Shown piece after piece: positions 19,388-64,000 of a DNA stretch of 64,000 nt. How positions within the stretch are numbered: the first letter of the stretch is position 1; the number at the start of each line of letters is the position of its first letter. Made by a program: the position numbers and the translations under genes. Under the pieces are notes generated by a model. That model saw only the letters and a list, made by a program, of their open reading frames with translations. It had not been told where the DNA came from and searched no databases. The stretch comes from Mytilus edulis. Its lineage: Eukaryota. The stretch covers positions 59,148,001-59,212,000 of the forward strand of contig NC_092348.1 of the NCBI RefSeq assembly GCF_963676685.1. Direction: 5' to 3'.

Positions 19388-19436
19388 ACCGGTTCCTGAT
19401 ACTGACAATACTGACATGGAAACTAAGAACGATTAG

Positions 19437-35550: not shown

Positions 35551-35553
<3 letters not shown>
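35222..35553. mobile_element. MITE with TGTACAA-rich inverted ends
   Basis: 35222-35300 pairs loosely with 35483-35553 and more closely with 37750-37826. Confidence 0.6.
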
Positions 35554-35589
<36 letters not shown>

Positions 35590-35595
<6 letters not shown>

Positions 35596-42672: not shown

Positions 42673-42959
42673 TTTGTATTATGCGAGGCCTATTAAAAGT
42701 GAAAAAAAGGTTTCAAGTAAACAGTTTTAAGTTTCATAGTATCAAAAATTTCACACTCGACCAACACTACATTAAACTTTGTTTTGTAAATTAGCGTGAC
42801 TGTACTTCTTTGTTTCTGCCTTGACTATAAGATTAAAATGAAATTTTATTATAGTTCATTTACCACTGTATTACCCAAACAATCTCCATGTTATGAATTC
42901 CCGGTAAAAGATGCTTACGGAACACCGACAAATGTCCTTGGCGAAAAAATAACGTTGTG

Positions 42960-43075
42960 TTAAATACGGCTAAGGTTATCTATGCCTGGGATAATAAAAT
43001 CCTTAGTTTTTCGAACAATTCAAAGTTTTGTAAACAGGGAAATTTATAAAAATGACCACATTATTGATATTCATG
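42960..43075 (-). mobile_element. Internal fragment of the retrozyme-like repeat, no hammerhead
   Basis: Reverse complement matches ~54848-54965 (atatcaat...ggtc.tttttataa...cctgtttacaaa...actaaggat...accttagc). Confidence 0.65.
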
Positions 43076-44979: not shown

Positions 44980-46420
44980 CTGTCAGGTATTTACTACATA
45001 GAAACTATGTAGTTTAACACTTAAATGAAGATACAGTTATATTACCGTTGTGGAAAAACGAAAAGTCGAAGTTTACAGAAGTATGAAAAAATAAATGAAA
45101 ACATCCCATTTGAAAGTACAAAATATCATATGAGTTGCTATACATATTTCACCAGTAAGCACAATTTATAATCTTCTGTTTTGTCTGTACAAAGACTGTG
45201 TACAAATGTAAGTACAATTACCAATTTTCATATATCATCGAGGCAGTAGATCTACAACTCATTCTGATTTGTCTGTTTGTATATTTTGCAAATGTATAAA
45301 ACCTAAAAGCAAGTTACAAAACTTCATAAGGTATCCTTTGAGGAGCAAACTCAAGCTGTATTGATTGTTGCTACACATACCTCCTACAATTATCTGATTT
45401 ACAAAATAACTCATGAGAATTTTACTAGTAAAGCTTTATACTATCGAGCTTGCATCACTAAATATGTACTTCATAATTTGTAATCAGAAAGTAAAGAGCT
45501 ATTTAATTCTGAACATGAAACAGCTTTTCAAACGTTTCGACGATTAAAGATGACTTGACTGTTCACAAGAAAGTATTCTTGTTAACAACTTTACTTAATA
45601 GTTAAACCGGACTGAATTTCTGCCCGAGTATTGCCGCCGAGAAAAACTACAAAACATATCAGCTTCAGCAAAAACTAAAAATATATTTTGTTTAATTTAT
45701 AGTTATTTGTATACAGCCTCAACAAGGCCAATGTACGTTCAATTTGTATACAGTAGTTCTATAAACTTGTCCGATGCATTTAAAGACGGAAAATTAATCG
45801 TTTTAAATGACTGTGATATACAGTCTGTCAAATTTAATGATCTGAGCAATGACTGCGAAACTGCTTTATGCAGCTACTAGTATTTTACGGAAGCAGATAG
45901 GTAAAGTTGTAATCCAATCAGATGAATATCTTTTATCTAAAGACACTTCACTGGATCATTCAATTGTAATAATGCCACCTGCTTTATAAACATTTCTGCA
46001 TTGTCTTTTGGATGATGGCAGTTAATAAAGAGTACGATATACATATTGACAAAGTTCTTAGATGTATGGCTTTAGCAGAATGTATACTATCTATAAAAAG
46101 ACATTTGTTTACTCCTTTCCATTTATGTTTATCATAAATGCACCGTATATATGAACACACCTTGGCTAACCATTAACACGTTTGGCTGATCATGAGATTA
46201 GAAAAATTGAAGATGGGGCATATGTTCTACATAGTGTTATTTCTTGGGGGTCAAACCTTATCCCAGACAACGTCTCCCTAACTACAGAAACAAAAAAAAG
46301 TTCTCAGTATGACTTTGGTTGGCTAAAAGGCAAGATCGGTCGGATGCCAATTATATTTACTGGTATGATGTCATCCGACTTTCTACAAGATTTGATCTGT
46401 TCACGCAAATGTATAGGTAT
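44980..46420 (+). pseudogene. Heavily decayed, internally deleted DNA transposase relic (Academ-like); probable element end near 48052
   Basis: Manual translation gives KYHMSCYTYFTS, VCIFC, ALYYRACITKY, YKTYQLQQKLKIYF, LYAATSILRKQI, MPPAL*TFL, ALAECILS..FTPFHL, FGW and DLICS, in the order I recall for Academ-type transposases. The family call is from memory. Confidence 0.5.
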
Positions 46421-46741
46421 ACGGGGAGGGTTGAGATATCAAAAAACATTTTAACCCCGCAGCATTTTTGTGCCTGTCCGAAGTCAGGAGCCTATAGCCT
46501 TTGTTAGTCTTGTATGATTTTTTATTTTAATTTCTTGTGTATATTTCGGAGTTTAGTATGACGTCGATTATCACTTCAAACTGGTATAATACATTTTTGT
46601 TTAGGGGCCAGCCGAAGATGGCCTCCGGGTGTGGGAGTTTTTCGCTGCATTGATGACCCATTAGTGGTCTTCGGTCGTTGTCTGCTTTTTGATCCGGTTG
46701 TTGTCTCTTTGACACATTCCTCATGTCCATTCTCAATTTTA
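46420..46741 (+). repeat. Dispersed repeat of a related family
   Basis: Its end ggttgttgtctctttgacacattcc...ttctcaatttta recurs at ~17690, ~50790 and 55320-55400 (-). Confidence 0.65.
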
Positions 46742-48261
46742 AAATCAATCTGTAGTAGATATTAATTGTGTCCACTTTTAGCAAAATCTCTGCTGTACTG
46801 ATATATGCCCATGCCAAGGAAGTGGTCTTTGTATGAATATGTGGACTGATAAGAATTATGAGATTACAAGTGAAAATGAAGCTGTAATATTCCGATATCG
46901 CAATATTCTGACACAACTAAATGGTCTGACATCCCATTGGTTTGACGTTTCGATCATTAAATTAAAATTATGATAACGGAATATTAACATAAGAAAGCCA
47001 AATAAAAGGTTCAATATTAGGATAACCTTGTCCTTCGTTTGAAGTGGTGAAACAATTTATAAAAAGGTAAGTATATTAGTGCCAAAGTAGCCGAACGTCA
47101 TCACCGGCGTCATTAAAAGTACAAAGTACTTTGTAAAGTGTTGTTTGATTAAAATTAGATATCTCAAGATTCAAGGCGGTCGACCAAAGTAAAATTAAAC
47201 ACAGTTTGACGTACAATGAGTGATCATTTTTTCCTTGTGATGTTTTTTTTATCAAAATTGTCTATTTGTTGATATAAATATACTAATATCACTTAACTCA
47301 TTTTAGTAATGTTAGTTAGTACTCTTATCATATCTGATTCAGTGATGTAAACGAAATTGCGGTATGATCCAGACTCATCATTTTGCACTACAACAATAAT
47401 AAAAAAAAATGTCCTATGGTTATTTGATGCTGACGCGGTTTGCAGGCTTTCGAACTAACAGTAGAACATACGTTTCTTCCATTTTAATGTAAAGTTCATC
47501 ATGATACCTTTCTATTAAATTAAAAATTCGTCATAGGTTATATTTTCCCCTTGCTTCAAATATTTTGTTTCGGTTTATTTATATCAAAATTGCAGATATA
47601 CATGTTTGTAAATGCGTGCAATCAGTTGATATGGAGGTCTTATAAGATTTAAATAATGCAAGGGCGACTACAGATACATTTGTGTGACTTAATGGTTGAT
47701 TTTCAAAGACTCCGAGAGAAAACGTTACGTAACATACGTTACCGTTAAAATCGACCAAAATAAATTAATACTATGATAGAAATATATTTTCCCAACAGTA
47801 ATACAGTATTCCTATAGTATTGTTTCGTTTTTGCACATGTTTTGACTCGATATTTCTACTGGAGGTATCCATGAATAGAAATTGCATCCATGACCTTTGA
47901 CCCCGATTTTAAACAAAATTGCACCATGATTTCTTTTAACGACCGGGATATTTAGAAAGTACACATTCTCAGCTTTCCAGTGATATATAATTTAGCCATA
48001 TGTTAGGTAGGTGCATTACAAATGTAAATTTGGCTCTCATATGACTCGCCTATACAACACTACAAAGCAAAATAACCACGTTTCGAGCAGCGGTATACTA
48101 CTGTTGCCTATAATTTGTATTTTTCTAACTTAAAACAAAGGACAGCCATGTATCCATAAAGTACCCAGAAACTTAGGATTTCAACAAAAGTGAGACAATG
48201 AAATGTTTTATTTTAAGGAACAGACAGTAGGAGAAATGCTCAAACTGCTTAAAAGTTATTT

Positions 48262-48447
48262 TAGTACGACGAAAACATGAATAATAATTAGAGGACACCA
48301 ATAACGTGATTCATAATTAGGGTACGCCGATAACGTGATTCATAATTAGAGTACGTCGATAACATGATTCATAATCAGAGTTCGCCGAAAACATGATTCA
48401 TAATTAGAGTACGACGGAAACATGATTCATAACAAGAGTACACCGAA
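48262..48447 (+). repeat. 29-bp minisatellite, ~6 copies
   Basis: Unit ~ataacatgattcataattagagtacgccg at 48301, 48330, 48359, 48388 and 48417. Confidence 0.85.
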
Positions 48448-50148
48448 CACATTAAGTATACACATTTTACCTGTATAATCCAAAATCCTTTTGGTTATTG
48501 TTGTCGTTAGACTGTTATTTCAAACTCGATTCGCATATACCATGGACATAATTATACAAAATCATTGATATGAACATTTTGGCTCACAATTTTTTTTCCA
48601 CCGGCAAAAGGCAAAAATGTTCGCTAGTTTAATCAAATAATAACATCAAAGTCACTATTTTTGTCAGGGAAGGACTATTTTTTATTATGTTCTTAGTTGA
48701 AGTGGGAGAAGTGGTGGTCTGAAACTTTTATTCCTAGAAGTTTAACATACATTTTCAGATCACAAAAATTGACTGTCAGTTCTTTTCGTCAAGTTTTAAC
48801 TTCTTTAACACTCTCCATTCTGGTTTATGTTTATTTTCTCATTCGTTCATAAATGATCATAACTTGATGGAAACTAAATTTTTATGACAATAGTTTAAAT
48901 GTCACAATCATAATAGCTCATTGTTTTAGAAACTCGGCGTTATTAAACTTTAAAACCATAAAAGATCCTAAAAAAAAAACAATTTACGTATACTTTAAAT
49001 TTATTTAACCATTTTTTCAAATATAGTTTAACAAATTTAATATATACGATTGATGATCTTCTTTTAATACAAAACAACAAAAAAATCAGATAAAACACTT
49101 TTATGACTTTTATAGTCACGATTTGCACTTGTAGATCGTCAATTTCCTGTAGTCAACCAGGTATATGGGAAAAACAAACGCGACACATTTATTTTTAAAA
49201 GTCATGCTACAGATATGATAATAAGAAAAACATATAAAACAGATAATGAAGTACAAAAAATGGATAGTAAAACAGACCTAAGCACACCCATCCTTCCATG
49301 CAACAAACTTTTAAGAGAAACAAAACAAGCAATTAAAGATATATCACAAATAAGTACCAAATATAGAAAGTTAGGTTTAGATATACATGTAAAGCCAGAA
49401 ACTCTTTTTTTCAGAGAACATATAAAAATGGTGAAAACTAAAACTACAAGAAAATCAATGTTCATGTATATTAACATAGGTTTCTGTATAAATGACAGCA
49501 TATCCTCGAGGATTTGAAGTTCGTTACCCTAAACGGAAAGGAAAAACACAATCTTGGTGCAAATGTTATCCACTGTGAATTCAAATATTCTTTACTTAGT
49601 TGCAAACAATCTGATATTTTAATTGAGGAATAAATGAAGTTTCTGCGATTTTTGTCAAAAAGGATTCAAAATTCCTTTGAATTTATTTCATTTCCGAAAG
49701 AATTTCTCAATCGATTTCCATCGTTTGTATCCACAGCGTTCATATTGTTAAACATTTTCTAATAAGAACGTTAATTTGATTAAAATGTATAAAAATTGCA
49801 AGTATTTATAAACGGTTTTTTTAATGGTCTAGAAATCAACCATGGTATTGTTACATTCTAAAAGAACACATTGGAACACATCGTTTGTTTATGTGTTACA
49901 TTTTTGTTTTTCGTTCATTTTTTTTTTAATATAAATAAGGCCGTTAGTTTTCTCGTTTGAATTGTTTTACATTGTCTTATCGGGGCCTTTGATAGCTGAC
50001 CATGCTCATTGTTGAAGGCCGTACGGTGTCCTATAGTTGTTAATGTCTGTGTCATTTTGGTCTCTTGTGGACAGTTGTCTCATTGGCAATTACCTTCTTT
50101 TTTTATACAATTGAAACTTTGATATTGTACATTTATTTATTATAACAA

Positions 50149-50335
50149 AACTTCATCAAACTAGATACATTTTATACCAAGATTTAAATATTGTAAACCA
50201 GACGCGTTTTGTCTGCAAAAGACTTATAAATGACGCTCGAATCAAAAAGGGGAAGTACAGTACCAAGTTGCATTGAAGAGCATTGAGAACCCAAAATTCC
50301 GAAAGGTTTTGTCAAATAAGGCTAAGGTATATCTT
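50149..50335 (-). mobile_element. Decayed partial retrozyme-like copy
   Basis: Reverse complement reads tcgagcgtca-tttataa-gtcttttgcagac-aaaa-cgcgtctgg; the core is destroyed. Confidence 0.7.
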
Positions 50336-51193
50336 TAGTATTTCGATAGATTTGTTTACATTTCATTTATGATTATGACCATACCAGAACACTGCAGTTC
50401 TACATGCAACTACTGGGCAAGTTTGAAATACCTTTTGAAATGGCGCTCGTTTGATCCTATTATAGTTCTGTGAAATTTTACCTTTACTAACTCTTCCCAT
50501 GTTAATTTAACGTCTTGAATATCGTCAATATTGGCGATTTTCCGAGAAATGTTCTGTGAATCACATATTCCATATTACAACACTAAAAAGGACATTTTTC
50601 ACTAGCAGTTTGATATAATATTGGTACCTATCGTTTTAACCCGACATTTAAGTATTGACATCCCTCAAACTAGACTAATTTCTACATTTCTACATAGGGA
50701 CCAGCTGAAGCAAGCCTCCGGTTGCATGATTTTTTAGCTGTGTTGAAGACCGTTTTTTGACCTTATACTGGTTTGCTCTATGGTCAGGTTGGTGCCTCTT
50801 TGACCCATTCCTCGTTTCATTCTCAATTTAATTTATATATATGTTCATGTGCATATCAGACCCTAGGCGGTGATGGTCTTAACGTTTGTATCATTTTAAT
50901 TTTTGTGTCACGGTTGACAGCAAAGATTTCAGAGTCTCTTTAAATATCCAATACTCGTCTTGACTTCAAACCAACTTAATGCTCAACATGTATTAACCAT
51001 CTTTTTATGAAGACCTTTGATTGTGTTGGTTTTGTGTCGTCGTGCTGCTGTAACATTAAAACATACCAAATATTCCCGTAATTTACTTTGATTATGCTAC
51101 CAATAAATTCTTTTTTCAGCTTTTACAGCTGTAAATTGACATATGTTTTTCGCCCACTATGTATTTATTTAATAACATATTTCTTTCTTCCAG

Positions 51194-51340
51194 TTTTTGT
51201 GATCTTTTCTGATTCCGATGTCTTAAGAGATTTTCTGTATGCAGCAGACGAGCTTTCAATGACGGAAGGTGATCATGTGTTCATTACGATGGAATTGTTC
51301 CCTAGTGATTGGCTAGGATACTACACACAGTTCCTTCGAG
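51194..51340 (+). CDS. Receptor guanylate cyclase, exon 3
   Basis: ttcttccag|; VFVIFSDSDVLRDFLYAADELSMTEGDHVFITMELF...FLR; donor G|GTATGT; phase 1-1. Confidence 0.9.
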
Positions 51341-51556
51341 GTATGTAAGAAGAGACTTGAAGCAAGACGAGGAAAACCCCAAACAAAATCAAACTGTGCC
51401 CTCATAGGCATTCAATATTAACATTTCGCAAGTTTAACATCCTGACAATTAAAAAAGAGGAGAAAAAAAAAAAGACCAGCAAACTAACAACTACACGCAT
51501 ACACATGTATTTATTAAAAAATGGATATGAAACAATAGAGCAATCCAAAAGTATAT

Positions 51557-52620
51557 AAATAAAGTCAACAGTAGTATACCTTTGTTCAAAACTTATAAAT
51601 CGATAGAAAAAAACAAACAAATCCGGGTTACAAACTAAAACTGAGGGACAGGCATTAAATATTAGAGGAGAACAATGACACAACATTAAAATGTAACACA
51701 CAGAGAAACGAACTAAGCATTAGACAAAATCCGACGAGAATAACAAATATAACATCAAAACTAAATACATGAATTTGGGATAGAAAATTCCGTGACACGT
51801 CTTATAATAATGTGAATTCACCCTAAGATATAAGAGGAAACAAACTGCATAAAAGAAACACAACGTTAAAATGTAACACACACATAAACGAACTATAATA
51901 TTACAATGGCCATATTCCTGACTTGTATTTGGTACAGGACATTTTTTAAAGAAAAAAATTGTGGGTTGAACCTGGTTTTGTGGCATGCCAAACCTTCCGC
52001 TTTAATGGCAATGTTAAAAATAACATTAAAATGACAACACAACATTACAGGACTACAATACACATAAATAGGAGAACATATTAGACAAAGAAACACACGA
52101 ATAATACCTAACAAAAAGGCACCAGGTTTAAAATTTAATACGTCAGAAGTGCGTTTCGTCCACATAAGACTTACTAGTGACGCCCAGATACAAAAGTTCG
52201 AAAGCCCAAACAAGTACAAAGTCGAACAACGATGAGGACCAAACGTTGAAAAAAGTTGTGCCACATACGGCTAGGGTTTTCTGCTTGGGATAAGAACATC
52301 CTTATTATTTAGAATAATTTATACTTTTGCAAACAGTAAATTTTATAAAATGACCATATAATAGATATACATGATAAAAAGTATTAACAAATTAAAAAAG
52401 ACCAAACCGGATACATTACATAAACCAACATAATCCAACACAAAGAATAGACACACACGAGTTAGTCAAGGCCTTAACGCAAAAAGTGACGTCACATTTG
52501 AAATTGTAAAAAAGGCCAAAAAATTACGTCACATTTGAATTTCTAAATCAGTACACAAAAAAAAATACGTAACATTTGAATGACTAAAACTATTTGTCAA
52601 AAATAAGATAGAATTAGGAT
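51557..52620 (-). mobile_element. Second copy of the composite Helitron-like element
   Basis: Reverse-complement homology to 20423-21253, including the 3' hairpin and an embedded decayed hammerhead at 52141-52184. Confidence 0.75.
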
Positions 52621-54537
52621 ATGTTGATAAAAATGGTCAAATAGATAAAAAAACAAAAAAAATTGACGAACAGACGAACAACATTCCTCACAACAACCCG
52701 CCGTAACAGACAAATGTTATATCATGTATTTCGAATAAGTGAAACTCGATCGTCCCATTTCCTAAATTTCACACGGCGTATCGCTATGTACAAGAAAATC
52801 TTGTTAAATTGGAAAATGAAAAGCGCCACGTTTCTTGAAAAATTTCAACCATCCTATGCCATCATTTTTTGTAACTTATGTCAAAATATTTGTCCCCGGA
52901 TTTCGTACAATTACTAATTGCACGTGTTAAAATCCGCTTGGGTAATATGGAAAAAAAGAGTTGAAAATCTTTCATATCTGACATTATGACATGCACTACC
53001 GTTTGAATTTCTTTAATTTATGACTTTTCTGTTGTTTCTCTCATCGGGAGAAAACACATTTGTTTTTTTTACAAAGGAAAAATCTCTTCATTATTTTTGG
53101 AATCACGTCCTGTGACACGTCTCCTGGAGCTTAATTAGAAACGACATTCAATACATATCACTAATAGTAAAAGTAACAGATAATAATAATACAGTATTAA
53201 ATTCTTCTTAGAACTTAATTAATAGACATGGAAAACCCCAGCGACAATAACGGAACTAGCAGCTGCGATTTTTTAAACTGATTCAGAAGAGTTATTTTCT
53301 AGAACACATCGAATGGGCCTCTCAACTGTTCTGATTCTTATTACGACTGCAAATATAAACTAAAAAAACACACTCACTATTCTCTGGTATTACTTTTTGA
53401 CATATATTGTTTCAACAATAAGGAACTGCAATTCTGTAACAAATTTTTAACAAAGTTGGTAAATCAATACTAAAAAAAGTTTAAACCGGTATAAATTATT
53501 TATCAAATTTTACGAAAGATTGAAGTTTTTAAAAGAAAGAAAAGTAAATGATATTTGATTTCTAGCCGCATTTCTACCAGTCCAATTACATGTTGTGGAT
53601 CATGTCAAATCGCTGACTTCCGGTTATAAATATATAAAGTTAAAAACCCTTCTCCGATAGAAATATTTGAAAATAAATTTCTTCATCAGCTTTCGATTAA
53701 ATTGCAGTAAAAGGTAAAAAAAATTAATTTTGACAATAGAAAATCGAAAAAGGACATACACCATTGTACACAATCATCAATAAAAAAAAAGGAAAAACAC
53801 CTTGCAATCATTTAACGTAAACACTTCGTAGTACAACGGCTAGACTTATTACAAGTTTTCAACAACAATCGAAATCCTAAAAAGACATAATTTAAATCAA
53901 TTAGGCGGGTGATTAGTGAACACAAATATTTACTTAAATCTAAATTCTTTGGAGGATAGGCGTGAGAAAACAAACCACTATCAAAACAGGAGGTATATAT
54001 GGAGCTTTTCGCATTAGGCACCAGTCTTTTTTTCTTGTTTTACAGGCAACAGTAGTAGATCAATTTTTAAATCTCATAGCTAAAACAGAAGATACAAATC
54101 ATAGTTTAATAACAAATTTGTAACGATTTTAAATTATTCATGACCAAGAAAAGACTTCAATTCTCGTAAATTCATTTTAAATATATACAACTCAAGAGAA
54201 GAAAACATTGGGAATCAAAAGCGCATGACAGAAAATGCGATGTAAAAGTGAGCGTCTATTGCTTTACAAGCAAACTAGGTGAATGAAACTTGAGGAAATA
54301 TTCTCCAAGGACAAGTTCTTTGGTTGCAGGTCATTAGCTATGTTTAACAGATTTAATAGTCAAGCAACATGTTCTGCCAGGTTGATTGTAAATAACTTGA
54401 ATGTGATCAGTTTTCTCAATGAACTTTAGAACTTTAATTTTGTTTTCATATTCTCTGAAAAATAATTGCCGAAATTTAAACATGTGATAGGTTATCCATT
54501 AATTCTTCCAATGAATATCTCCCCCTTTCTCTTTAAG

Positions 54538-54689
54538 GTGATTATAAAGATGCAGCTGTTACCAAAGCATACGAGTCTCTGTTGCTGCTTACACCCTTAC
54601 AACCAGACAACATTGAACATAAAATATTCTCTGATGAGGTCAAACTGAGAGCACAGAGAGATTACGGATACACGTTTGGAGTAGACGAG
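54538..54689 (+). CDS. Receptor guanylate cyclase, exon 4
   Basis: ctctttaag|; GDYKDAAVTKAYESLLLLT...RAQRDYGYTFGVDE; donor GAG|GTATGG; phase 1-0. Confidence 0.9.
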
Positions 54690-54719
54690 GTATGGTATAT
54701 GTCCTTGTATTTTATTGGT

Positions 54720-55120
54720 GTCTGGCGTATAAATTATAATTCTGGTACCTTTGCTAACTTTTTTACACCACTGGGTTGATGCCACTGCTGTTGGACGTTT
54801 CGTCCCCGAGGGTATCACCAACCCAGTAGTCAGCACTTCGGTGTTGACATCAAATATCAATTATATGGTCGTTTTTATAATTTCCTGTTTACAAATGTAC
54901 CAAACTTTGAATGTTTGGAAAAACTAAGGATTTCTTATCACAGGTGTATATTACCTTAGCGTATTGGGGACAACCTTTCGAAATTTTGGGTCCTCAATGC
55001 TCTTCAACTTTGTACTTGTTTGACTTTCAACTGTTTTGCTATGAGCGTCACTGATAAGTCTTATGTAGACGAATCGCGCGTCTGGCGTATTATATTATAA
55101 TCCTGGTACCTTTGACAACT
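54720..55120 (+). mobile_element. Retrozyme-like repeat, one full ~360-nt monomer; its hammerhead core (55046-55087) is mutated
   Basis: GTCTGGCGTAT...TATAAT(T/C)CTGGTACCTTTG occurs at 54720 and 55080, a 360-nt period from cleavage site to cleavage site. The core reads CUGAUAA...GAAU. Confidence 0.8.
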
Positions 55121-56631
55121 TTTCTTTTGTACTTATATTCACAGATTATTTTTTAAAAGATTATAAATTCGATGCATCACCATCATTGTAATATAAAGAT
55201 GGTCCGTCTTTTCAGTCGAAATTGTTTTTGAATTTTTTTTGGCTGTAAATATGTTTCTGGATTTTTTTGGGGGTATAAAATAGATAAACAAATATTGATT
55301 GAATAGAATAGAATAGAATAGAGAACGAAAAAGAGAGAGTGTCAAAGATACAAAAACCCGAACAAACAGCAGAAACAGGCCACGGCCACCAAAAGGTCTT
55401 TAACATAACGAGAAAATCTCATGCTTGAGCTTACTCTTAAACAATAATGAATTGAATGACTATTGAACTCTTTGCAAACATATTATAAGTTTATCAAGAA
55501 GTTCAAAGCATATTATTAATAAAATATTATGGTTAGAAAGTGAACGTTGAACAGTTGACCTTTGTTCGCCTTTAATAAAAGATAACTGATGAAAGAACAG
55601 AATGGGAACCAGACCTTCGTATGATCATGTTTAAAATATATTGAGGGATTACATTTCATAAAAGGGTTTGAAAGACCTTTTGCGGGCGTCAGGACTTGGC
55701 CTTTATTTCGCGAATATCGGGATATTCTCTTATCGGGATTCGGCAATTGATAATTAATATTTTGCGACCCAGAATAGAATGTTTTATTTTTTTCTCTGAA
55801 AAATTAGGATAAACCCTCTGTTTATGTCACTTTTATTAAGAAACTAGATATTACAAGCCATATTCAATTAACAAGTTATTACAACTACTGTAGATCACTA
55901 TTAGATAGGCGTTCCGAAAAGAACCCAAGGACAAATGTGGTGAGGATCGAATGATATCAATCAGTTTGCCTATCGTAAAGTTTATTGATACACTCGTTGA
56001 TTCAATTCCGTTTATGTAGATCCGATAGAGATTATAAATTATACAAATATTATATGATATCGAGTACTTAGTTCATTAGTTTTATTTATTATGATCAGTT
56101 TTCTTCTGTCATAAAAACTAATGGCAGCAACATGTTATGCATTAATCAACTTTATATGTTAATACAACTAGAAAAAGAACAGATATTGAGTGAAAACAAC
56201 ATGAAAAGCCTTTACTCGAAGACGTGATCGGATGCAAATCGTATGAAGAGGATGTAATAGGATACCATATTTATTTTTTTAACTTTTAGTTGTAAAGATC
56301 ATCTTATAATCAAAATAAATTTTGTTGGAGACAACAACGCACAGATACAATATATCTTAAATATCTATATGATTTATTTTAGAGTTAAATTTCAATGGAT
56401 ACTTTTTGAATTTACTTGAATACAAAAATTGAGTGGTTTAATTGAAAATGTCCTAATTCTTTTTACAAGTACATTTGGAATAAAGTTTATAACGTTTTAA
56501 ATAACAGTTTTTATGAGCTCCCCCTTTTTGGAATTGTCTTGGAGTTCTGTATTATTTTTCGTAAAGTGAATCTTTTAAACAAAGAAAGCCTAATCATAGC
56601 AGACAATGTCGCCAAATGACAAATATATTTT

Positions 56632-57131
56632 CAATATTAGGTCAATGTCAAGAAAATATAAACTTTCTTGTATGAGGATGAGAAACTGGGGAAAGGCGAG
56701 GTTCTACCGAGCCCTTACTTAGGTTTGCCCCGAGTACTACAAAAAGTATATTTTTATGACATTGACGTAATATTGTTTTTATACTACACCTAAAATTAAT
56801 ACACTGATAGCTTTTAAAACAAGTTTATACCGAAACTAGTTGTGTTTATTTCCTAAATATAGTAACATAGCTTTATTTTGTATAATGTCAATTTCATCAT
56901 GAAGCACATTCTCCACAATCAGGGGTCCATTAAGGCATGAAAATAAATTAGAAATTTGTGTTACGATTTGAAAAGCTATCAATGTATTAATTAAAGTTGC
57001 AGTATAAAAACATTATTAGGTCAATGTCATAAAAATATAAACTTTTGAGTATTAGGTAAAACCTCGCCCTTTCCCAGTTTCCGAGCCTCATTAAAAAAAG
57101 TAGATAATTTTCTGACATTTACCTAATATTG
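56632..57131. mobile_element. Element with ~130-150-bp inverted arms, each arm itself a hairpin
   Basis: 56632-56785 is the reverse complement of 57001-57131 apart from a central indel; each arm folds on itself (caatattaggtcaatgtca...tgacattgacgtaatattg). Confidence 0.75.
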
Positions 57132-57214
57132 TATATTAATTGTTGACCTCATTGTTCTATTAGGTTAGGTTGGGTTGCTGTATCACTGATAGAGTTCTGG
57201 TAATCTATTTTTAG

Positions 57215-57353
57215 GTCGTCAACTACTTCATTACCGCATTTTACGATGGTGCCATTTACCTAACCGAAGCTATCAACCGAACTGTTGAAGAAGGTGGTGA
57301 CCTAAATGATGGACTGGCTTTGTCACAGAAACTCTGGAATGATACATATATGG
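57215..57353 (+). CDS. Receptor guanylate cyclase, exon 5
   Basis: tttttag|; VVNYFITAFYDGAIYLTEAINRTVEEGG...QKLWNDTYM; donor G|GTATGT; phase 0-1. Absent from the ORF track. Confidence 0.9.
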
Positions 57354-58480
57354 GTATGTTTTATCAATTAACTATGGAGGCGGGCTTTTCTAAATCTATT
57401 AAAAGCTTTTGAGTTAAATTGAGGACGTTTTGTTTTCTTAATACGAAGACAACAGGCAGAGTTTAATTGGGACGAACTTTTCAAAGACACATATAAAACA
57501 TGTTGAGTTAAATTGGGGACGGACTTCTCAAAGTCTATAGACATGTTCAGTTAACTCAGTCAGTGCTAACAATTGGTATATCAGGAATGACATCTTACCA
57601 TTTGTTATAGGACCATTCGATATGTCTAAAATACTAGAACGAATTTGATTCAGGTAAATCTTATTCGTTTCCTTAATGAACATGTTGTTTTTATTTGACA
57701 TTTTAGCTATTGCGTTACATTAATATGTAGTTTAGAAATGTTGCATCTAACAGCAAACATGTAAAAGTAGTTAAAATGTAACGTTATCCTCTCGATGTTC
57801 ATACTTATGTAGTTTTCTTTAGCATTTGTTTATGTTTTTTAGTTCTGCTGATTTTCTTATATTGTACATCAAATCAATATCGATATCACAGTCATATATA
57901 TTGTAGATTTAATATAATTCACTGGTAATTACATGTAACTGATACAGGGTATACGTAGTTAAGGTTCACATACCAATACACTGTCTGTTTATATTAAGTT
58001 GAACCAATAGATTTTGATAATGGTGTATAGAGCCATGAAACAATAAAGTAATTGAACTTCATCATGATGAATAATTAGACATTTTTTTTCTTTTGAATTG
58101 TTTAACATAGTCATTACGGTTTTTTTTATAGCTTGCTTACGGCATTTTGGTCACTAGTGGAGAATAAACGTTGTCTGATGGGCAATAAGGTCATATCTTC
58201 CTATTTCTATAATGTTCACCCATGAGTTCTTAAAGTATATTTTTAATGTGGAGAACATGAGAGCGCGTTCGCTTCAATTATCCGAGTTCAAATGAAGTTC
58301 AAGTAAACATTATTGTTTGTTTCTTGAAAGAACCGAGATTATAAAGCATTTAATATTTACCCTTTTGAAAAAAAAACCATATTATATCATATTTTTTTCC
58401 ACGATTTATATATTAATCAGTTTTTGATTGTTCAATTTGTATCGACCGAAAGTGTCTAGTTTAAGTCAAAGATACCTGTA

Positions 58481-58600
58481 TTCAACTTTGTACTTGTTTG
58501 GCTTTATAAATATTTTGATATGGGCGTCACTGATGAGTCTTATGTAGCCGAAACGCGCGTCTGGCGCATTAAATTGTAATCCTGGTACATTTGATAACTA
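58481..58600 (+). mobile_element. Partial retrozyme-like repeat copy
   Basis: ttcaactttgtacttgtttg...hammerhead...aatcctggtacatttgataact matches 55002-55120. Confidence 0.8.
58524..58567 (+). ncRNA. Minimal type I hammerhead ribozyme, intact core, one stem II mismatch
   Basis: GCGUCA-CUGAUGA-GUCU(uaugu)AGCC-GAAA-CGCGCG-UC^UGGCGC; predicted cleavage after 58561. Confidence 0.85.
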
Positions 58601-59114
58601 TATAACTATAATAGGTATGGTCTTCACTAAAAGAAGAAAATTATGCACCAGTCGCCAAGGAAGTAAAGTTTCCATAACATAACATTTTATAAATATAATA
58701 ACTTGACAAATAATCCAAACGCCTAATTACTACTTTTCTTATAACTGCCTTTTCAAGTTAGATCATAATCACATCTATGAAATATATGTTTAGCTTACAT
58801 GTCTATATGTATTATAGAATTTAGATCAACTATACGAGGTTTCTAGTCATACCCTAATTATGATGACTTACATGGCTTTTTTATACAGGCCGTCCTTCTA
58901 CGACACAAACAGGAAGGCAATCAAGCAAAAACCAAAAGAAGCCTTCCATAAAGTAATCTTTATTCGAACTACTAGATTTTCATCTAGACACATTTGACTG
59001 CTAGACCGTGTGACATTTATAACATTATATGAATTTAAAAATTCAAAATGTAGCTACTAGCAAAATATAAGCTTATTCATGACCTGTCTATGTTTTACCT
59101 TTTCTTATCTATAG

Positions 59115-59209
59115 GCATAACCGGATTGGTAGCCATTGATCACCAAGGAGACAGATTAACTGACTTTGATATCTACCACATGACAGACTCAGCAACAAAA
59201 GCATTCAAG
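59115..59209 (+). CDS. Receptor guanylate cyclase, exon 6
   Basis: ctatag|; GITGLVAIDHQGDRLTDFDIYHM, matching the conserved GxTGxVxID..GDR motif; donor AAG|GTACAT; phase 1-0. Confidence 0.92.
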
Positions 59210-60169
59210 GTACATTTATGCAACATAAGAAATATAAAATATTTCAAATCAGCAATCTATCATATATTTCTAGTTTGTAGTGGTTTACCGTAATGTTACT
59301 TTGTATCTTGTGATTATTCATTAATTAAATGAGAAAATAATAATTAAAAAAGTTTTAGTTCCTTGACCTCTGGGAACATTAATAATTTAGATTTATTAGC
59401 TTTATGATATCACGAAACAAAAAGTCAGCCGGTTTTTCATCCTTGAGAAACATGTTCCATTGCTGTCTATTTGAATTCTCTTTATCGTTAGAGTCAGACT
59501 TTAGAATAACGCTTATTCTGCCATTCATGTTTGTAAATATATTACATGAGCTCTGACAAGTAATTTCTGATTTTTATTGCTAAAGTAAATGGTTTTTCCA
59601 TAAAATGTAGCGCTTAATATGTATTAACAATGTAAATAACCGGTAATGGATGGAATGAAATGACCGTGACAACACCTGGCCAGGTCTAGAACTGCACATG
59701 TCTATAGATTATAATTTATATAGCAGTATAGGTCACCCGGCTCAAGTGAAGAACAACAAAGAAGTCGATAACATATTTTCATATATTTCCAAATGTAGAG
59801 TCTATTTGTTCGTATGACAATGAAAAATCGTCAGACATACCTCAATAAAACTGAAATATTTCAATCAAATTATGATTAGACTTCGAGTTTTGGAGAAGAA
59901 AAAAACTTAAGATTGTCAAATAACAGTAAGATATTGGTGTTTGAAAATATTAATGTTTCAATATCATTATTTCATATGAATAATTTAAAAGCCAATCAAT
60001 TTAAATATACTAACTTAATGATAATTACATTCTTAGCTACGCGACAGTGGAAACTGAAAAAAGCATGGATTTCCGATAAATCAATTAACTTTAAAAACTT
60101 ATAGCAACAAAATATTAATTTGACTGAATAATAAAAAAATAAACTTATCGAAATGATTTTTCTTGATAG

Positions 60170-60296
60170 TTAGTTGGAAGATTTCGAGGAGCTACGTCAA
60201 ATTATGAACCAATCCCTGGTGTGTCAATACAATGGCGAAATGGTCTACCTCTTGATACCCCTGTGTGTGGGTTCAGAGGAGAATGGTGTGTGGTCG
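60170..60296 (+). CDS. Receptor guanylate cyclase, exon 7
   Basis: ttgatag|; LVGRFRG...IQWRNGLPLDTPVCGFRGEWC, with the juxtamembrane PxDxPxCGF..C motif; donor G|GTACGA; phase 0-1. Confidence 0.9.
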
Positions 60297-61058
60297 GTAC
60301 GACTGGTGTTGTTTTTCTTGTTGTGTAACCTAATTGCCCGTGTTGTTTTTTTAAAATTAGTGTTTTCAATAATCCCTTATCCCTTAATTCCCTTGCTTAT
60401 ACAACCGACACATACCACTTTCATATTATTTTGTTTGCAACGGGCCGTTTTTACTGGCCAGATCAATGAGAATATTATCTACAACCATTTACATAATTTA
60501 TACGTTTCTAATTCATAGTGCTTATCTTATAAATTATACTAACCAGTATTCAACCTGACCCATTGGAATGAAAATGAACCACTTTAAAGAAAATGTGTTA
60601 TAACATGAGTGGTTTTTGAAAGACGTTGCAATTATGACGAAATATTTCGCCGTATTGGGATATTGTATTGAATTATATTAATAGCTGATTTAACTTAGAA
60701 CAGTAAAGAAAGGAGAAAAAACGGAAATCTTAATATGCAGTTCCGTATAAGATGGGTAAAACTGAAACATTTCATGGAAAAGTAGCTCGCCATAGTGTTT
60801 GTTCGGTATAATATGCTGTCATTTCATAAATAAAATATTGCAAATGAAAAAAATCAATATCATCAGCTATATATATTTGTAACTTTGGCTCAATGTAATG
60901 TAAATTCTGCGGAAACACTTTTTCATTACTCTAACTGCTGTTGTCAGAGCTTTTGTATTTAGTAGAGGGAAAATACGATGTAACAATATGAATTAATTAG
61001 TTACTTTTTAAAATATCAAATTATACCATGAATGTTCTTTTTATGAATTTTTTGAGAT

Positions 61059-61271
61059 AATAAGGCTTTTCTACCTCAGGCATAGATTACCTTAGCTGTA
61101 TTTGGCAACACTTTTAGGAATTTTGGATCTCAATGCTCTTCAACTTTGTACTTTATTTGGCTTTTTTCATTTTTTTAGGATTCGAGCGTCACTGATGAGT
61201 CTTTTGTAGACGAAACGCGCGTCTGGCGTATATTCAAAATGAAGTCCTGGTATATATGATGAGTTTATTTA
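61059..61271 (+). mobile_element. Partial retrozyme-like repeat copy
   Basis: Colinear with 54925-55120 (ttaccttagc...caatgctcttcaactttgtactt...hammerhead). Confidence 0.8.
61187..61228 (+). ncRNA. Minimal type I hammerhead ribozyme, intact core
   Basis: CGUCA-CUGAUGA-GUCU(uuugu)AGAC-GAAA-CGCGCG-UC^UGGCG. Stem I CGUCA/UGGCG, 4-bp stem II, palindromic stem III, predicted GUC cleavage after 61223. Confidence 0.9.
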
Positions 61272-61404
61272 TAAAAAGACTATCTTGCATTTTCACTTAT
61301 ATTTTTTCTTCCTTATATCCTCATTATGCCTTTGTGACTTAACTGATATTACTATTTTAACTGCAATGTTTGTCTCTCTGAGGTTCAATTGATTTACATT
61401 TCAG

Positions 61405-61492
61405 ATTCTAATAGCAGTTTGACTTTTACAGTTGTATGTGTATTGATTGTTTTACTAGTTATTGGATCTGTGGCCTTTTTCTTTATATACAG
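61405..61492 (+). CDS. Receptor guanylate cyclase, exon 8 (transmembrane helix)
   Basis: tttcag|; DSNSSLTFTVVCVLIVLLVIGSVAFFFIYR; donor AG|GTATGG; phase 1-2. Confidence 0.9.
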
Positions 61493-61899
61493 GTATGGTA
61501 TAAGGAAATATTCCCCATTTCAATTCTTAATTTTATAATATCAGTTTGAAACATTGTTCTCATTTAATAGAAATGTTTGTCATCAAGTTTGATCTGATAA
61601 CAATCGGTTGTTGACATCTGATCACATATAATTAAAACCTGTAAAAACGTTTAAAAAATCTACAATACAAGATGTATGTCTTGAATATAACAACGTTAAT
61701 AATGTCCTGTGTTTAAAAATGTAATATCAGAGTTATTTTTTCATAAGATATATAAATATGTTTTTATTCACTGTACATGTATAACCATCAATGCATTCTA
61801 TATGCAGGACAAAAATCTTATTACTGCATGTTTTATTAATAATTAATATGCATGACTTCAATTCAAATTTGATGTTATGAAATTTCTTTTTTGATCCAG

Positions 61900-62050
61900 A
61901 AAAATTAAATTGGACAATGAACTCGGTCAGAAGACATGGTTAGTACCTTGGTCTGAGGTTAGAATTTCCAAACACAACAAACAGCAGGGTTCACTGATTT
62001 CTATGTCCCGGATGTCATTAGCAATAGTAGGAGGTGATGATTCTAGTCAG
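61900..62050 (+). CDS. Receptor guanylate cyclase, exon 9 (juxtamembrane, start of the kinase-homology region); gene continues past the window
   Basis: gatccag|; KIKLDNELGQKTWLVPWSEV...GSLISMS resembles the NPR pattern K.KLE.EL....W.V.WE; donor CAG|GTAAAC; phase 2-0. Confidence 0.88.
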
Positions 62051-62335
62051 GTAAACATTATGGTTGTGATTACCAAATACACGTATTATAGTTTTAAGTT
62101 TATTTAGATAAGAAGTGCCAATGAAACAACCCTCTGTTCAAGTCCAAAAGTATAAAAAGTTTACAATTATGGGTCTATGTAATAGTAGGAGTTGATGAGT
62201 CTAGCTATGTAAACATTATATTGTGACTACTATACTAAATACACGAGTAAGATATTTGAGTTAATTTAGATAAGTGCCAATGAGACAATCCTCGATTAAA
62301 TTTACAATGTGTAAAGAGGCTTTAATTATAGGTTA
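62023..62335 (+). repeat. Diverged ~158-bp tandem duplication spanning the exon 9 donor
   Basis: aatagtaggaggtgatgattctagtcag-gtaaacatta (62023) vs aatagtaggagttgatgagtctagctat-gtaaacatta (62181). Confidence 0.8.
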
Positions 62336-62425
62336 GAGTGCACAAAGCAATGGCTCACACCGAAGAGCAAGCTATAAAGGTCCCAAAATTACTAGTGTAA
62401 AACATTTTAAACAAGGAAACAAACT

Positions 62426-62876
62426 GGTCCGAGTACACAGTTATCGTCCTTTGATTTTCGTTGTCCAGGAATATAGTCCTTAGTGTGGACAGTGTGTTAC
62501 TTGCCAATTTTTGTTATACCCCTTCCAAATTTATTTCTCCATGTTTTATGCCTCATATATCAAGTTGGGGGGTGAAATGACACTGTAAAAAAATTTGGGT
62601 CATAAATATTAATGTAAAGTAGTGATAAGGTCCTGCTGAAAAAGGTCAAAAATTAGCACTTCGGAAACTGTCAAAAGATTTCAAGACCCCCTTAACATAA
62701 AATTGTCCATATTTTGAGTTAGAGCTGATGAAGTTTTCTATAACTTTGATATAATTTGTCCAAAAAGTAGTACAACACACTGTAAAAACATTATTGAGAA
62801 AGCGCAGGTGGGATTTTTTTAATTTTCATTTATTGTATAAAAGAAATGCACTACGAAATAACTGTGTACTCGGATC
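62426..62876. mobile_element. MITE with 17-bp perfect TIR core and 4-bp TSD (AACT), inserted in a dispersed repeat
   Basis: AACT|ggTCCGAGTACACAGTTAT...ATAACTGTGTACTCGGAtc|AACT; the host repeat resumes as gtctaatcta. Confidence 0.85.
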
Positions 62877-63813
62877 AACTGTCTAATCTACATTAAAAAA
62901 AACGACAAACGACAAACGTATGAACCACACTAACAAAAGGTAACCACTGAACAATAGACTACCGATTTAGGGTAGTTGCATACAAAACAGCGGGTTTAAA
63001 TGTTTAAACAGGCACACTGACATGGGACAGTCGTGTTCTATTTCAGCGTAAAACTATTAAAGATTGGTTCTATCAGATACGTTAAAAAGTCTTAATGTAA
63101 TAGGCAAAAAGGAATGTTATATATTATAAAAAAAAATCAAAAAGGTTCACAAACAACCTTTTTTCGTTCATTTTTTTTTTCATAAATAAGGCCGTTAGTT
63201 TTCTCGTTTGAACTGTTTTACATTGTCTAATCGGGGCCTATTATAGCTGACTATGCGGTATGGGCTTTGCTTATTGTTGAAGGCCGTACGGTGACCTATA
63301 GTTGTTACTATCTGTGTCTTTTTGGTCTTTTGTGGATAGTTGTCTCATTGGCAATCATACCTCATCTTCTTTTTTATATTTATGGAAACACTTAGAAAAG
63401 TTAGGAAACCGGTATGATAACACATTAAGACATTAAAAGGAAATATAAACCATATTGTATTATGCGACAGAATACACTTACTACAAAAAAACTGTTTATA
63501 TAGTAAAAGAGGTAAACAGCAATGGTAAACTATCCTTACTACGTTCAGTTGCTTGATAAAAAAATGAAAAAGGCAGTAGTTTTTGTTATTTTTATCGATC
63601 TACACAATTTAAACTTCAGTTTAATAATGTCGCTTTATTAAACAAACAACTGCATTCATGAAAAAAAAATGACACAAAATGATTGAACAACTATATAAAT
63701 ATAAAGATATTCACACATTTGATAATATATTTTGATTGTATTCTGTAATATCATGTTTGGATTCATAGCTCTTTATATTAAATGTTTCGGTACTTTTGCG
63801 TGAATTCTTTGAA

Positions 63814-63853
63814 CGTTTCTGATGAAGGATAATCTAGAAAAGCGCTTCAGACG
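63814..63853 (+). ncRNA. Minimal hammerhead ribozyme of a second family (Penelope-type)
   Basis: CGUUU-CUGAUGA-aGGA(uaa)UCUa-GAAA-AGCGCU-UC^AGACG. Stem I CGUUU/AGACG, palindrome AAGCGCUU, UUC triplet, weak stem II. Confidence 0.72.
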
Positions 63854-64000
63854 CATGCGATTTTGAAAGCGTTGTTTCCATTTCGTCTTGAACTCGCCTC
63901 TTTTAAACTGCGTTTGCCAGCTGTGTAATACATTAAGTTAGTTAATTAGCTAAATGTGATGATAATTGTCTTTTTTACTATAATTTGGAGTACGGTGTTA

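What the first reader, a model, noticed from the sequence alone, without database searches (positions are those of the whole stretch)
54720..63853. Cluster of sense-strand minimal hammerhead ribozymes in the introns of a receptor guanylate cyclase
Seen: four hammerhead motifs lie on the transcribed strand within 9 kb. They are in intron 4 (55046, core mutated), intron 5 (58524, intact core), intron 7 (61187, intact) and intron 9 (63814, intact core, different family). The antisense copies in the same gene (50198, 52141) and the intergenic copy (20845) are all decayed. Known: minimal type I hammerheads with a palindromic stem III occur in Penelope-like elements and in non-LTR retrozymes of animals. 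Inference: this pre-mRNA carries potentially active self-cleaving RNAs that could affect its processing or stability. The sense/intact bias rests on few copies.
Basis: partly seen in the sequence, partly recalled or inferred. Interest (0 to 1): 0.85.

Follow-up and report, generated by a model that had tools for sequence, protein, structure and literature searches.

The report
Mussel retrozyme hammerhead copies in introns
The four hammerhead motifs are real, but they are truncated copies of mobile elements (retrozymes) already described in mussels and present tens of thousands of times in this genome, so their presence in these introns is ordinary and gives no sign of a special function.

Summary
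Observation confirmed; interpretation mostly not. The four sense-strand motifs sit where stated, in introns 4, 5, 7 and 9 of a + strand receptor guanylate cyclase. They are four independent, 5'-truncated insertions (0.22-1.14 units) of three retrozyme families.

- **61184-61231:** letter-identical to the hammerhead of the cloned Mytilus galloprovincialis retrozyme that self-cleaves in vitro (PMC7229834).
- **58524:** intact core, but a private A-to-C change breaks stem II.
- **55046:** two core mutations.
- **63814:** a 78-nt stub of a third family with a non-canonical stem II.
- **Rfam:** none reaches the Hammerhead_1 gathering score (32.5 and 26.3 against 34; two do not match).

The exact 32-nt hammerhead occurs 11,714 times in this 1.37-Gb genome, and 40,461 times with up to 3 mismatches. 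It is perfect in 15 of 19 young dispersed copies.

The "sense intact, antisense decayed" contrast disappears across the whole gene. An antisense copy with an intact core and three dead sense copies lie downstream. Integrity follows copy age.

No RNA data exist, so cleavage of this pre-mRNA is untested.

This scan holds 26 other first-stage notes naming hammerhead, retrozyme and intron in this genome; the 8 listed describe such copies in or around introns.

By-product: retrozyme insertions share a fixed 3' end 37-48 nt past the cleavage site and have variable 5' ends.

The parts
54720..55123 (+). Family A retrozyme copy of 1.14 units, in intron 4. It starts 30 nt after the exon 4 donor (54689/90). 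The last 44 nt repeat the first 44. The hammerhead at 55043-55090 is dead (G8A, A15.1U).
   Evidence: 87.5% identity to an array monomer, reference positions 351 to 41; 3 mismatches to the published hammerhead.
58481..58604 (+). Family A copy, 5'-truncated to 0.35 unit, in intron 5. The hammerhead at 58524-58567 has an intact core, but a private A-to-C change at 58548 breaks the U10.2-A11.2 pair. The predicted cleavage site is 58561/2, 553 nt before exon 6.
   Evidence: 91% identity; RF00163 26.3 bits; family state at 58548 is A.
61041..61273 (+). Family B copy, 5'-truncated to about 0.63 unit, in intron 7. The hammerhead at 61186-61229 is perfect. The predicted cleavage site is 61223/4, 181 nt before exon 8, which encodes the transmembrane segment.
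   Evidence: 93-95% identity to dispersed copies; 2909 first-look candidates; 32.5 bits; 48 nt identical to the cloned, in-vitro-active M. galloprovincialis retrozyme.
63807..63885 (+). Family C copy, truncated to a 78-nt stub (hammerhead plus a 37-nt tail), in intron 9. The core is intact. Stem II has A-A at 10.1/11.1 (the family state) plus a G-U here. The predicted cleavage site is 63848/9.
   Evidence: 1413 genome matches, arrays of period 350-351; exon 10 lies beyond the window at about 64075.
52115..52373 (-). Old antisense family A-like copy in intron 3, with a decayed hammerhead.
   Evidence: (79% identity).
50175..50334 (-). Old antisense copy in intron 2, with a decayed hammerhead.
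   Evidence: (74% identity).
42951..43075 (-). Antisense internal fragment of family A (reference positions 126-248) without the hammerhead part.
   Evidence: 92% identity.
20633..20914 (+). Old intergenic copy with a decayed hammerhead.
   Evidence: (70% identity).
27480..64000 (+). Receptor guanylate cyclase gene, which runs on past the window. Exon 1 lies in 27480-27935 and exon 2 in 33446-33739. Approximate ends: exon 4 at 54689, exon 5 57215-57353, exon 6 59115-59209, exon 7 60174-60296, exon 8 61405-61492 (transmembrane), exon 9 61900-62050.
   Evidence: Pfam was run exon by exon. ANF_receptor. PK_Tyr_Ser-Thr and Guanylate_cyc in downstream loci L063/L064. Splice sites were read. Exons were never joined.

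Best explanation
[quoted passage not shown] Two are family A, one is family B and one is family C. Families A and B match the elements described in Mytilus galloprovincialis.

**How the family works (published model).** The elements live as tandem arrays of about 350-370 nt. Transcripts are cut by the hammerheads, ligated into circular RNAs and copied back into DNA by a borrowed reverse transcriptase.

**What the insertions here show.** Reverse transcription appears to start at one fixed site 37-48 nt downstream of the cleavage site. It stops after a variable distance. That gives copies with a common 3' end and random 5' ends, from 0.2 to more than 7 units long. Each intronic copy in this gene therefore keeps its hammerhead simply because the hammerhead lies next to the fixed 3' end.

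**State of the copies.** They are most likely neutral passengers whose hammerheads decay with age. The copy at 61187 is young and still perfect. The copy at 58524 has lost a stem II pair. The copy at 55046 has lost the core.

**Shown versus inferred.** Shown: family membership, copy architecture, genome abundance, and sequence identity with an active ribozyme. Inferred: the insertion mechanism, neutrality, and that any cleavage of this pre-mRNA is too slow to matter.
For: **Family membership.**
- Family A forms arrays of 352-356 nt and gave 7282 first-look candidates.
- Family B copies are 93-95% identical to the window copy and sit at about 365-370-nt spacing in arrays.
- Family C forms arrays of 350-351 nt.
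- The cloned mussel retrozyme and the circular-RNA consensus in the supplement of PMC7229834 carry the same hammerhead. Read by eye, their flanks are close to those of 61041-61273. The 48-nt hammerhead matches exactly.

**Insertion architecture.**
- Ten of 11 family A multimers end at reference positions 39-46. Their 5' ends are scattered and their unit numbers are non-integer.
- Family B shows a sharp 3' end in 19 loci. Family C shows the same in 11 loci.
- The window copies end at reference positions 41-43.

**Ordinariness.**
- The genome holds 11,714 perfect hammerheads and 40,461 within 3 mismatches.
- 15 of 19 young dispersed copies are perfect.
- Counted over the whole gene, there is no bias between orientation and integrity.

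**Kinetics.**
- The published rate is about 0.1 per min.
- Slow intronic ribozymes do not disturb splicing.
- The cleavage site is only 181 nt before exon 8.
Against: - Three family A/B hammerheads within 3 mismatches lie in 9 kb. The genome average predicts about 0.27. All four motifs are in sense. This is a modest local excess, picked out after the fact.
- The copy at 61187 is identical to a ribozyme that cleaves in vitro, so some cleavage of the nascent transcript cannot be excluded.
- No RNA run holds this locus. Nothing here shows that the RNA is left uncut.
- No target-site duplications could be recognised.
- The partner reverse transcriptase was not identified.
Confidence: 0.85

Rival explanations
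1. Co-opted intronic ribozyme. The perfect hammerhead in intron 7, perhaps with the one in intron 5, cuts the nascent transcript before splicing. That would lower or tune the output of full-length receptor, as proposed for the CPEB3 intronic ribozyme.
For: The copy is in sense orientation. Its sequence is identical to an active ribozyme. It lies just upstream of the transmembrane exon. There is precedent for intronic ribozymes competing with splicing.
Against: - It is a young copy of a family with thousands of identical hammerheads.
- There is no sign of retention beyond the base rate.
- The published rate gives a half-time of about 7 min, while exon 8 follows after 181 nt.
- Slow intronic ribozymes had no effect on splicing.
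- Nearest-neighbour folding puts the monomeric hammerhead fold about 10 kcal/mol above a competing hairpin.
Confidence: 0.06
2. Paired action. The hammerheads at 58524 and 61187 share the ACGCGCGU palindrome and form a double hammerhead in cis. Or each pairs in trans with abundant retrozyme RNA. Either would release a 2.66-kb piece carrying exons 6-7, which could be circularised.
For: - All four hammerhead families in this genome keep an 8-nt perfect palindrome as helix III, through compensatory changes. That fits dimeric action.
- Retrozyme RNAs are very abundant in mussel tissues.
- Cofolding of two hammerhead segments is favourable.
Against: - The copy at 58524 has a broken stem II.
- The two sites are 2.66 kb apart and belong to different introns, which are removed separately.
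- There are no RNA data.
- The mussel hammerhead was reported to cleave as a single motif.
- The energy of the double-hammerhead form could not be evaluated here.
Confidence: 0.03
3. The motifs are terminal hammerheads of autonomous Penelope-like elements rather than of retrozymes.
For: - Canonical Penelope-like elements carry minimal hammerheads near their 3' ends and insert as partial tandems with 5' truncation.
- A Penelope-like element with a GIY-YIG open reading frame lies in intron 2 of this same gene.
Against: - The family units are 350-370 nt with no reading frame, and they form long homogeneous arrays.
- The window's Penelope-like element shows no hammerhead in its 3' region.
- A tblastn of its protein pieces against 66 family loci gave one weak hit.
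Confidence: 0.05

Closest known systems
Non-LTR retrozymes of Mytilus galloprovincialis, hammerheads HHR A and HHR B (Cervera and de la Pena 2020, PMC7229834)
   Same: - Same hammerhead: 48 of 48 letters at 61184-61231.
- Read by eye, flanks close to those of the published clone (not aligned with a tool).
- Same unit size (350-390 bp) and the same tandem arrays.
- Two loop-2 variants (UUAUGUA and UUUUGUA).
- Thousands of copies.
   Different: - The window copies are solo, 5'-truncated pieces of 0.22-1.14 unit. Each has at most one hammerhead, so none can release a unit-length circle by itself.
- The copy at 63814 belongs to a third family, not among the two hammerhead types reported there.
Minimal dimeric hammerheads of Penelope-like elements and newt or Schistosoma satellites
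   Same: Type I topology, a very short helix III closed by a palindromic loop, and a position near the 3' end of an element that inserts as partial tandems with 5' truncation.
   Different: No reverse transcriptase or GIY-YIG reading frame belongs to these units. The mussel motif was reported to cleave as a single motif, though slowly.
Conserved intronic ribozymes of amniotes: hammerheads HH9/HH10 (de la Pena and Garcia-Robles 2010) and the CPEB3 HDV-like ribozyme (PMC10919898)
   Same: A self-cleaving motif in sense orientation inside an intron of a protein-coding gene.
   Different: - Those are single-copy and conserved at orthologous sites over long times.
- The CPEB3 ribozyme has kinetics matched to the distance to the next exon.
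- The motifs here are recent copies of a high-copy mobile family.
- There is no Rfam match to HH9 or HH10.
SINEs mobilised by target-primed reverse transcription
   Same: Non-coding, a fixed 3' end, variable 5' truncation, dispersed in introns in both orientations.
   Different: - No tRNA, 5S or 7SL head.
- No poly(A) or simple-repeat tail was seen.
- Copies longer than one unit are common, which points to a circular or multimeric template.

Membership tests
Hammerhead ribozyme, type I (Rfam RF00163) | Conserved core CUGANGA ... GAAA ... UH | tested here: met
   Met for 58524, 61187 and 63814. Not met for 55046, which reads CUGAUAA and GAAU.
Hammerhead ribozyme, type I (Rfam RF00163) | Three helices around the core, supported by covariation | tested here: met
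   - Across four families of this genome, 94.4% of cells are paired, against 21-43% for slid structures. Seven pairs show changes on both sides.
- At copy level, 61187 has all three helices.
- 58524 has a U-C mismatch in stem II.
- 63814 has A-A plus G-U in stem II.
Hammerhead ribozyme, type I (Rfam RF00163) | Score at or above Rfam's gathering threshold (34 bits) | tested here: not met
   61186-61229 scores 32.5 bits and 58524-58567 scores 26.3. The motifs at 55046 and 63814 are not reported at E up to 10. The array consensus differs from 61187 by one loop base, so I infer that the whole mussel family sits just under the threshold. I did not score an array copy.
Hammerhead ribozyme, type I (Rfam RF00163) | Self-cleavage at the predicted site | not testable with these tools
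   The identical 48-nt sequence cleaved co-transcriptionally at about 0.1 per min in PMC7229834. The variants at 58524 and 63814 are untested.
Metazoan non-LTR retrozyme | Type I hammerhead inside short non-coding tandem repeats (170-400 bp) without LTR, primer-binding site or polypurine tract | tested here: met
   At family level, arrays have periods of 352-356 nt (A), about 365-370 nt (B) and 350-351 nt (C).
Metazoan non-LTR retrozyme | A unit flanked by two hammerheads, so that a monomer can be released and circularised | tested here: not met
   Each window copy has at most one hammerhead. The only copy longer than a unit (54720-55123) has a dead core and no upstream hammerhead. These are derived fragments, not functional retrozyme loci.
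Metazoan non-LTR retrozyme | Expression as linear and circular RNA | not testable with these tools
   No RNA run holds the stretch. The four runs laid were all genomic-looking contigs.
Penelope-like element (autonomous) | Reverse transcriptase plus GIY-YIG reading frame upstream of the terminal hammerhead | tested here: not met
   The units hold no reading frame. The window's Penelope-like element (35767-37561, - strand) is separate and shows no hammerhead.
Co-opted conserved intronic ribozyme (HH9/HH10, CPEB3 type) | Orthologous conservation across species beyond that of the neutral intron | not testable with these tools
   No related eukaryote genomes were on hand. Contigs of other samples break at the repeats and do not bridge them.

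The most novel reading that the evidence does not exclude
Solo hammerheads left in sense orientation in host introns are not inert. The perfect copy in intron 7, 181 nt before the transmembrane exon, would be one example among a possibly large number genome-wide. Each would pair through its 8-nt palindromic helix III with the very abundant retrozyme RNAs, or with a second intronic copy, to form double hammerheads. Retrozyme expression would then cut and tune many host pre-mRNAs, including this receptor guanylate cyclase.
Probability: 0.05. Interest if true: 0.7.

Novelty: already known. Interest (0 to 1): 0.2.

Why it matters
As it stands the finding adds little. It places known mussel retrozyme fragments in one more gene.

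It would matter if intronic sense copies measurably cleaved host transcripts. With about 11,700 perfect hammerheads in the genome, that would be a genome-wide layer of ribozyme-dependent gene control driven by a mobile element.

The by-product may be more useful. Three retrozyme families share a fixed 3' end 37-48 nt past the cleavage site, scattered 5' ends and non-integer unit numbers. This points to a defined priming site for reverse transcription on a circular or multimeric template. The 2020 review (PMC7761336) says no conserved motif is known that would reveal which retrotransposon's machinery metazoan retrozymes use.

Tried and rejected
- **Rfam at gathering thresholds.** No match in the window. 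I relied on E-value mode instead.
- **RNA evidence.** No RNA run holds the locus. The four runs laid are genomic-looking contigs that break at the repeats. They give no read ends, no expression and no test of presence or absence. They did show that the C at 58548 is private.
- **Thermodynamic folding.** The hammerhead fold is not the minimum-energy fold for any copy: -4.4 against -14.1 kcal/mol for 61187, and +3.8 for 63814. I gave this little weight, because the identical sequence cleaves in vitro and the model ignores tertiary contacts.
- **Double-hammerhead energy.** This could not be evaluated because the structure is a crossing one.
- **Target-site duplications.** Nothing convincing in the AT-rich flanks.
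- **Partner element.** The window's Penelope-like element lacks a hammerhead and ends on (TA)n. Its protein pieces found one weak hit among the fetched loci.
- **Local duplication.** I rejected this as the origin of the cluster. The copies belong to different families and have different 5' truncation points.
- **Spliced protein model.** I did not build or search one.


Full report
**The observation**

All four motifs are on the + strand at the stated coordinates.

| Motif | State | Predicted cleavage site |
|---|---|---|
| 55043-55090 | CUGAUAA and GAAU: two core positions lost | none (core dead) |
| 58524-58567 | Canonical core; stem II reads GUC/GCC | 58561/2 |
| 61186-61229 | Canonical throughout | 61223/4 |
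| 63813-63855 | Canonical core, otherwise different sequence | 63848/9 |

Rfam gives no match at gathering thresholds. In E-value mode Hammerhead_1 (RF00163, gathering score 34) scores 61186-61229 at 32.5 bits and 58524-58567 at 26.3 bits. The other two are not reported at E up to 10.

The motifs are not chance. The 48-nt hammerhead printed for the cloned Mytilus galloprovincialis retrozyme matches 61184-61231 exactly, with none in 100 shuffles.

**The host gene**

Pfam was run exon by exon, by reference.

- ANF_receptor hits are collinear in exons 1, 2, 3 and 6, at profile positions 2-103, 111-175, 180-217 and 327-352.
- In the 20 kb downstream of the window there are four PK_Tyr_Ser-Thr pieces and three Guanylate_cyc pieces, again collinear.
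- The gene is a + strand receptor guanylate cyclase. It runs from 27480 to about 17.7 kb past the window.
- The element in intron 4 starts 30 nt after the donor.
- The cleavage site in intron 7 lies 181 nt before exon 8, which encodes the transmembrane segment.

**What the motifs are**

Each motif is the 3' part of a repeat. The genome (G000) has 1.37 Gb, and the matches fall on 14 large contigs, C1-C14. Against it:

- **Family A.** The intron 4 element matches long tandem arrays with units of 352-356 nt, with 7282 first-look candidates.
- **Family B.** The intron 7 copy is only 76% identical to family A. It is 93-95% identical to a second family, with 2909 candidates, mostly dispersed and some at about 365-370-nt spacing.
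- **Family C.** The 63814 motif belongs to a third family. Its pattern has 1413 matches and forms arrays of period 350-351.

Families A and B fit the non-LTR retrozymes of M. galloprovincialis described in PMC7229834. That paper reports:
- about 5000 type I hammerheads in repeats of 350-390 bp;
- two variants, HHR A and HHR B, that differ in loops 1 and 2;
- slow co-transcriptional cleavage, about 0.1 per min;
- very abundant circular RNAs.

Read by eye, the cloned genomic unit and the circular-RNA consensus in its supplement are close to the intron 7 copy over the flanks, and the 48-nt hammerhead is identical. I infer that the genome is a Mytilus or a close relative.

**How the copies got there**

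Against an array monomer, the window copies cover these reference positions:

| Window copy | Strand | Reference positions |
|---|---|---|
| 54720-55123 | + | 351 to 41 (one unit plus 44 nt) |
| 58481-58604 | + | 274 to 43 |
| 60985-61271 | + | 130 to 43 |
| 52115-52373 | - | 126 to 31 |
| 50175-50334 | - | 218 to 26 |
| 20633-20914 | + | 105 to 31 |

The 3' ends coincide and the 5' ends do not. The same pattern holds elsewhere in the genome:

- Of 11 independent family A multimers with a visible 3' boundary, 10 end at positions 39-46 (…CCTTTGATAACTAT). The eleventh looks like an internal deletion.
- Their 5' ends scatter from 6 to 344. Their lengths are non-integer, from 1.35 to 7.4 units.
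- Nineteen dispersed family B copies share a sharp 3' end about 48 nt past the cleavage site. Their 5' ends spread over 250 nt.
- Eleven family C loci share a 3' end 37 nt past the cleavage site.

This is the signature of target-primed reverse transcription from one priming site, on a template that can be read for more than one unit. It fits the circular-RNA model of PMC7229834 and PMC7761336. It also resembles the partial tandems and 3'-proximal hammerheads of Penelope-like elements.

One consequence follows. Any insertion, however truncated, keeps the hammerhead, because the hammerhead lies next to the fixed end. No target-site duplications could be recognised.

**Is an intact sense hammerhead remarkable?**

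- The exact 32-nt hammerhead (A or B loop) occurs 11,714 times in the genome: 5985 forward and 5729 reverse, with 0 in the reversed control.
- Within 3 mismatches there are 40,461.
- Among the 19 young dispersed family B copies fetched, 15 have a perfect hammerhead.

Across the whole gene (window plus downstream), the copies that keep the hammerhead part are these. Coordinates above 64000 are joined window-plus-downstream coordinates.

| Orientation | Copy | State |
|---|---|---|
| Sense | 61187 | Perfect |
| Sense | 58524 | Core intact, stem II weakened |
| Sense | 63814 | Core intact, stem II weakened |
| Sense | 55046 | Dead |
| Sense | about 78955 | Dead |
| Sense | 79559 | Dead (A9G) |
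| Sense | 79710 | Dead (stem II deleted) |
| Antisense | L063:3183-3230 (family B) | Core intact, GUU cleavage site |
| Antisense | L064, CTGAAGAG start at 7088 (fourth family) | Core intact |
| Antisense | 50175-50334 | Decayed |
| Antisense | 52115-52373 | Decayed |
| Antisense | 79849-79909 | Decayed |

That is 3 of 7 sense against 2 of 5 antisense, so there is no bias.

Integrity follows identity to the copy's own family. Intact cores are found at 86-95% identity and long-decayed ones at 69-80%. Two copies at 87.5% and 91% each lost the core through one or two hits.

The three family A/B hammerheads within 9 kb exceed the genome average, which predicts about 0.27. With roughly 150,000 such intervals in the genome, my estimate is that hundreds of equal clusters are expected by chance. 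This scan's own first-stage notes name hammerhead, retrozyme and intron together 26 times in this genome; the 8 listed describe such copies in or around introns. Those notes are unchecked.

**Are the hammerheads real ribozymes?**

At family level, yes. An alignment of 12 hammerheads from families A, B, C and a fourth family D was scored against the hammerhead structure.

- It keeps 94.4% of cells paired, against 21-43% when partners are slid.
- Seven pairs changed on both sides.
- Helix III is an 8-nt perfect palindrome in every family: ACGCGCGU, AAGCGCUU, AUGCGCAU and AUCCGGAU.
- It is maintained by compensatory changes, which suggests dimeric action, as in other minimal type I hammerheads.

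At copy level:
- 61187 should be competent.
- 58524 carries a private A-to-C change at 58548, where nearly all family copies in DNA runs have A. This breaks the middle pair of a 3-bp stem II.
- Family C has A-A at 10.1/11.1 as its family state, and the window copy adds a G-U. Its activity is unknown.
- Nearest-neighbour folding never predicts the hammerhead fold as the minimum. I give this little weight, because the same sequence cleaves in vitro.

**Would cleavage matter?**

There are no RNA data. No RNA run holds the stretch, and the runs laid were genomic-looking contigs that stop at the repeats.

From published work:
- The mussel hammerhead cleaves at about 0.1 per min, a half-time near 7 min.
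- Engineered fast ribozymes in introns abort splicing, whereas slow ones have no effect (Fong et al. 2009, as summarised in PMC10919898).
- The CPEB3 ribozyme is thought to act because its half-time matches the roughly 10 kb to the next exon.

Here exon 8 follows after 181 nt. I therefore infer little or no effect, but this is not shown.

**Verdict**

The motifs are real and correctly placed. The kind is already known, the element family is published for mussels, and the suggested orientation bias is not supported. The cluster is best read as neutral passengers. One copy remains probably capable of self-cleavage.

**Side results worth keeping**
- The fixed 3' end of retrozyme insertions.
- The conserved palindromic helix III across four families.
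- A third hammerhead family with a non-canonical stem II.

Noticed in passing
Loci L002-L030 (family A), L044-L062 (family B), L032-L042 (family C); window copies ending at 55123, 58604, 61273 and 63885: Retrozyme insertions of three families share a fixed 3' end 37-48 nt downstream of the hammerhead cleavage site. Their 5' ends are scattered and their lengths are non-integer (0.2 to more than 7 units). This fits one priming site for target-primed reverse transcription on a circular or multimeric template. The 2020 review says no such motif is known for metazoan retrozymes.
   Followed up: partly
window 63813-63855; genome pattern matches: A third retrozyme hammerhead family (about 1400 pattern matches, arrays of period 350-351) has A-A at positions 10.1/11.1 and AAGCGCUU as helix III. 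It is not among the HHR A and HHR B types reported for M. galloprovincialis. Its activity is unknown.
   Followed up: partly
alignment A2; family D copies at L065:984-1031 (-), L032:2644-2691 (+), and L064, - strand, CTGAAGAG start at 7088: Four hammerhead families keep an 8-nt perfect palindrome as helix III through compensatory changes (ACGCGCGU, AAGCGCUU, AUGCGCAU, AUCCGGAU). This points to selection for dimer formation in the master copies.
   Followed up: yes
L063:3183-3230 (- strand), in the intron between the kinase-homology exons at L063:2641-2850 and L063:3766-4026: An antisense family B copy has an intact core and a GUU cleavage site. Sense copies at L064:5559-5647 (A9G) and L064:5710-5777 (stem II deleted) are dead. 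Together these remove the apparent bias between orientation and integrity.
   Followed up: yes
window 6556-9144 (+): A single open frame of 863 aa with LRR_8 and TIR domains: a Toll-like receptor gene upstream of the cyclase gene.
   Followed up: partly
window 35560-37561 (- strand), inside intron 2: A Penelope-like element remnant. It has reverse-transcriptase-like frames and a GIY-YIG frame (21.7 bits against a cutoff of 22.6). It ends on a (TA)n run and no hammerhead is seen in its 3' region.
   Followed up: partly
window 18545-24153 (+): A LINE with endonuclease and RVT_1 frames, interrupted around 19957-21253 by an insert that holds the old decayed retrozyme copy (20633-20914).
   Followed up: no
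window 62227-62974 and 63162-63535: Two other very high-copy repeats in intron 9, judged by the summed contig depth in four DNA runs. The second is the deepest stretch of the region. They were not classified.
   Followed up: no
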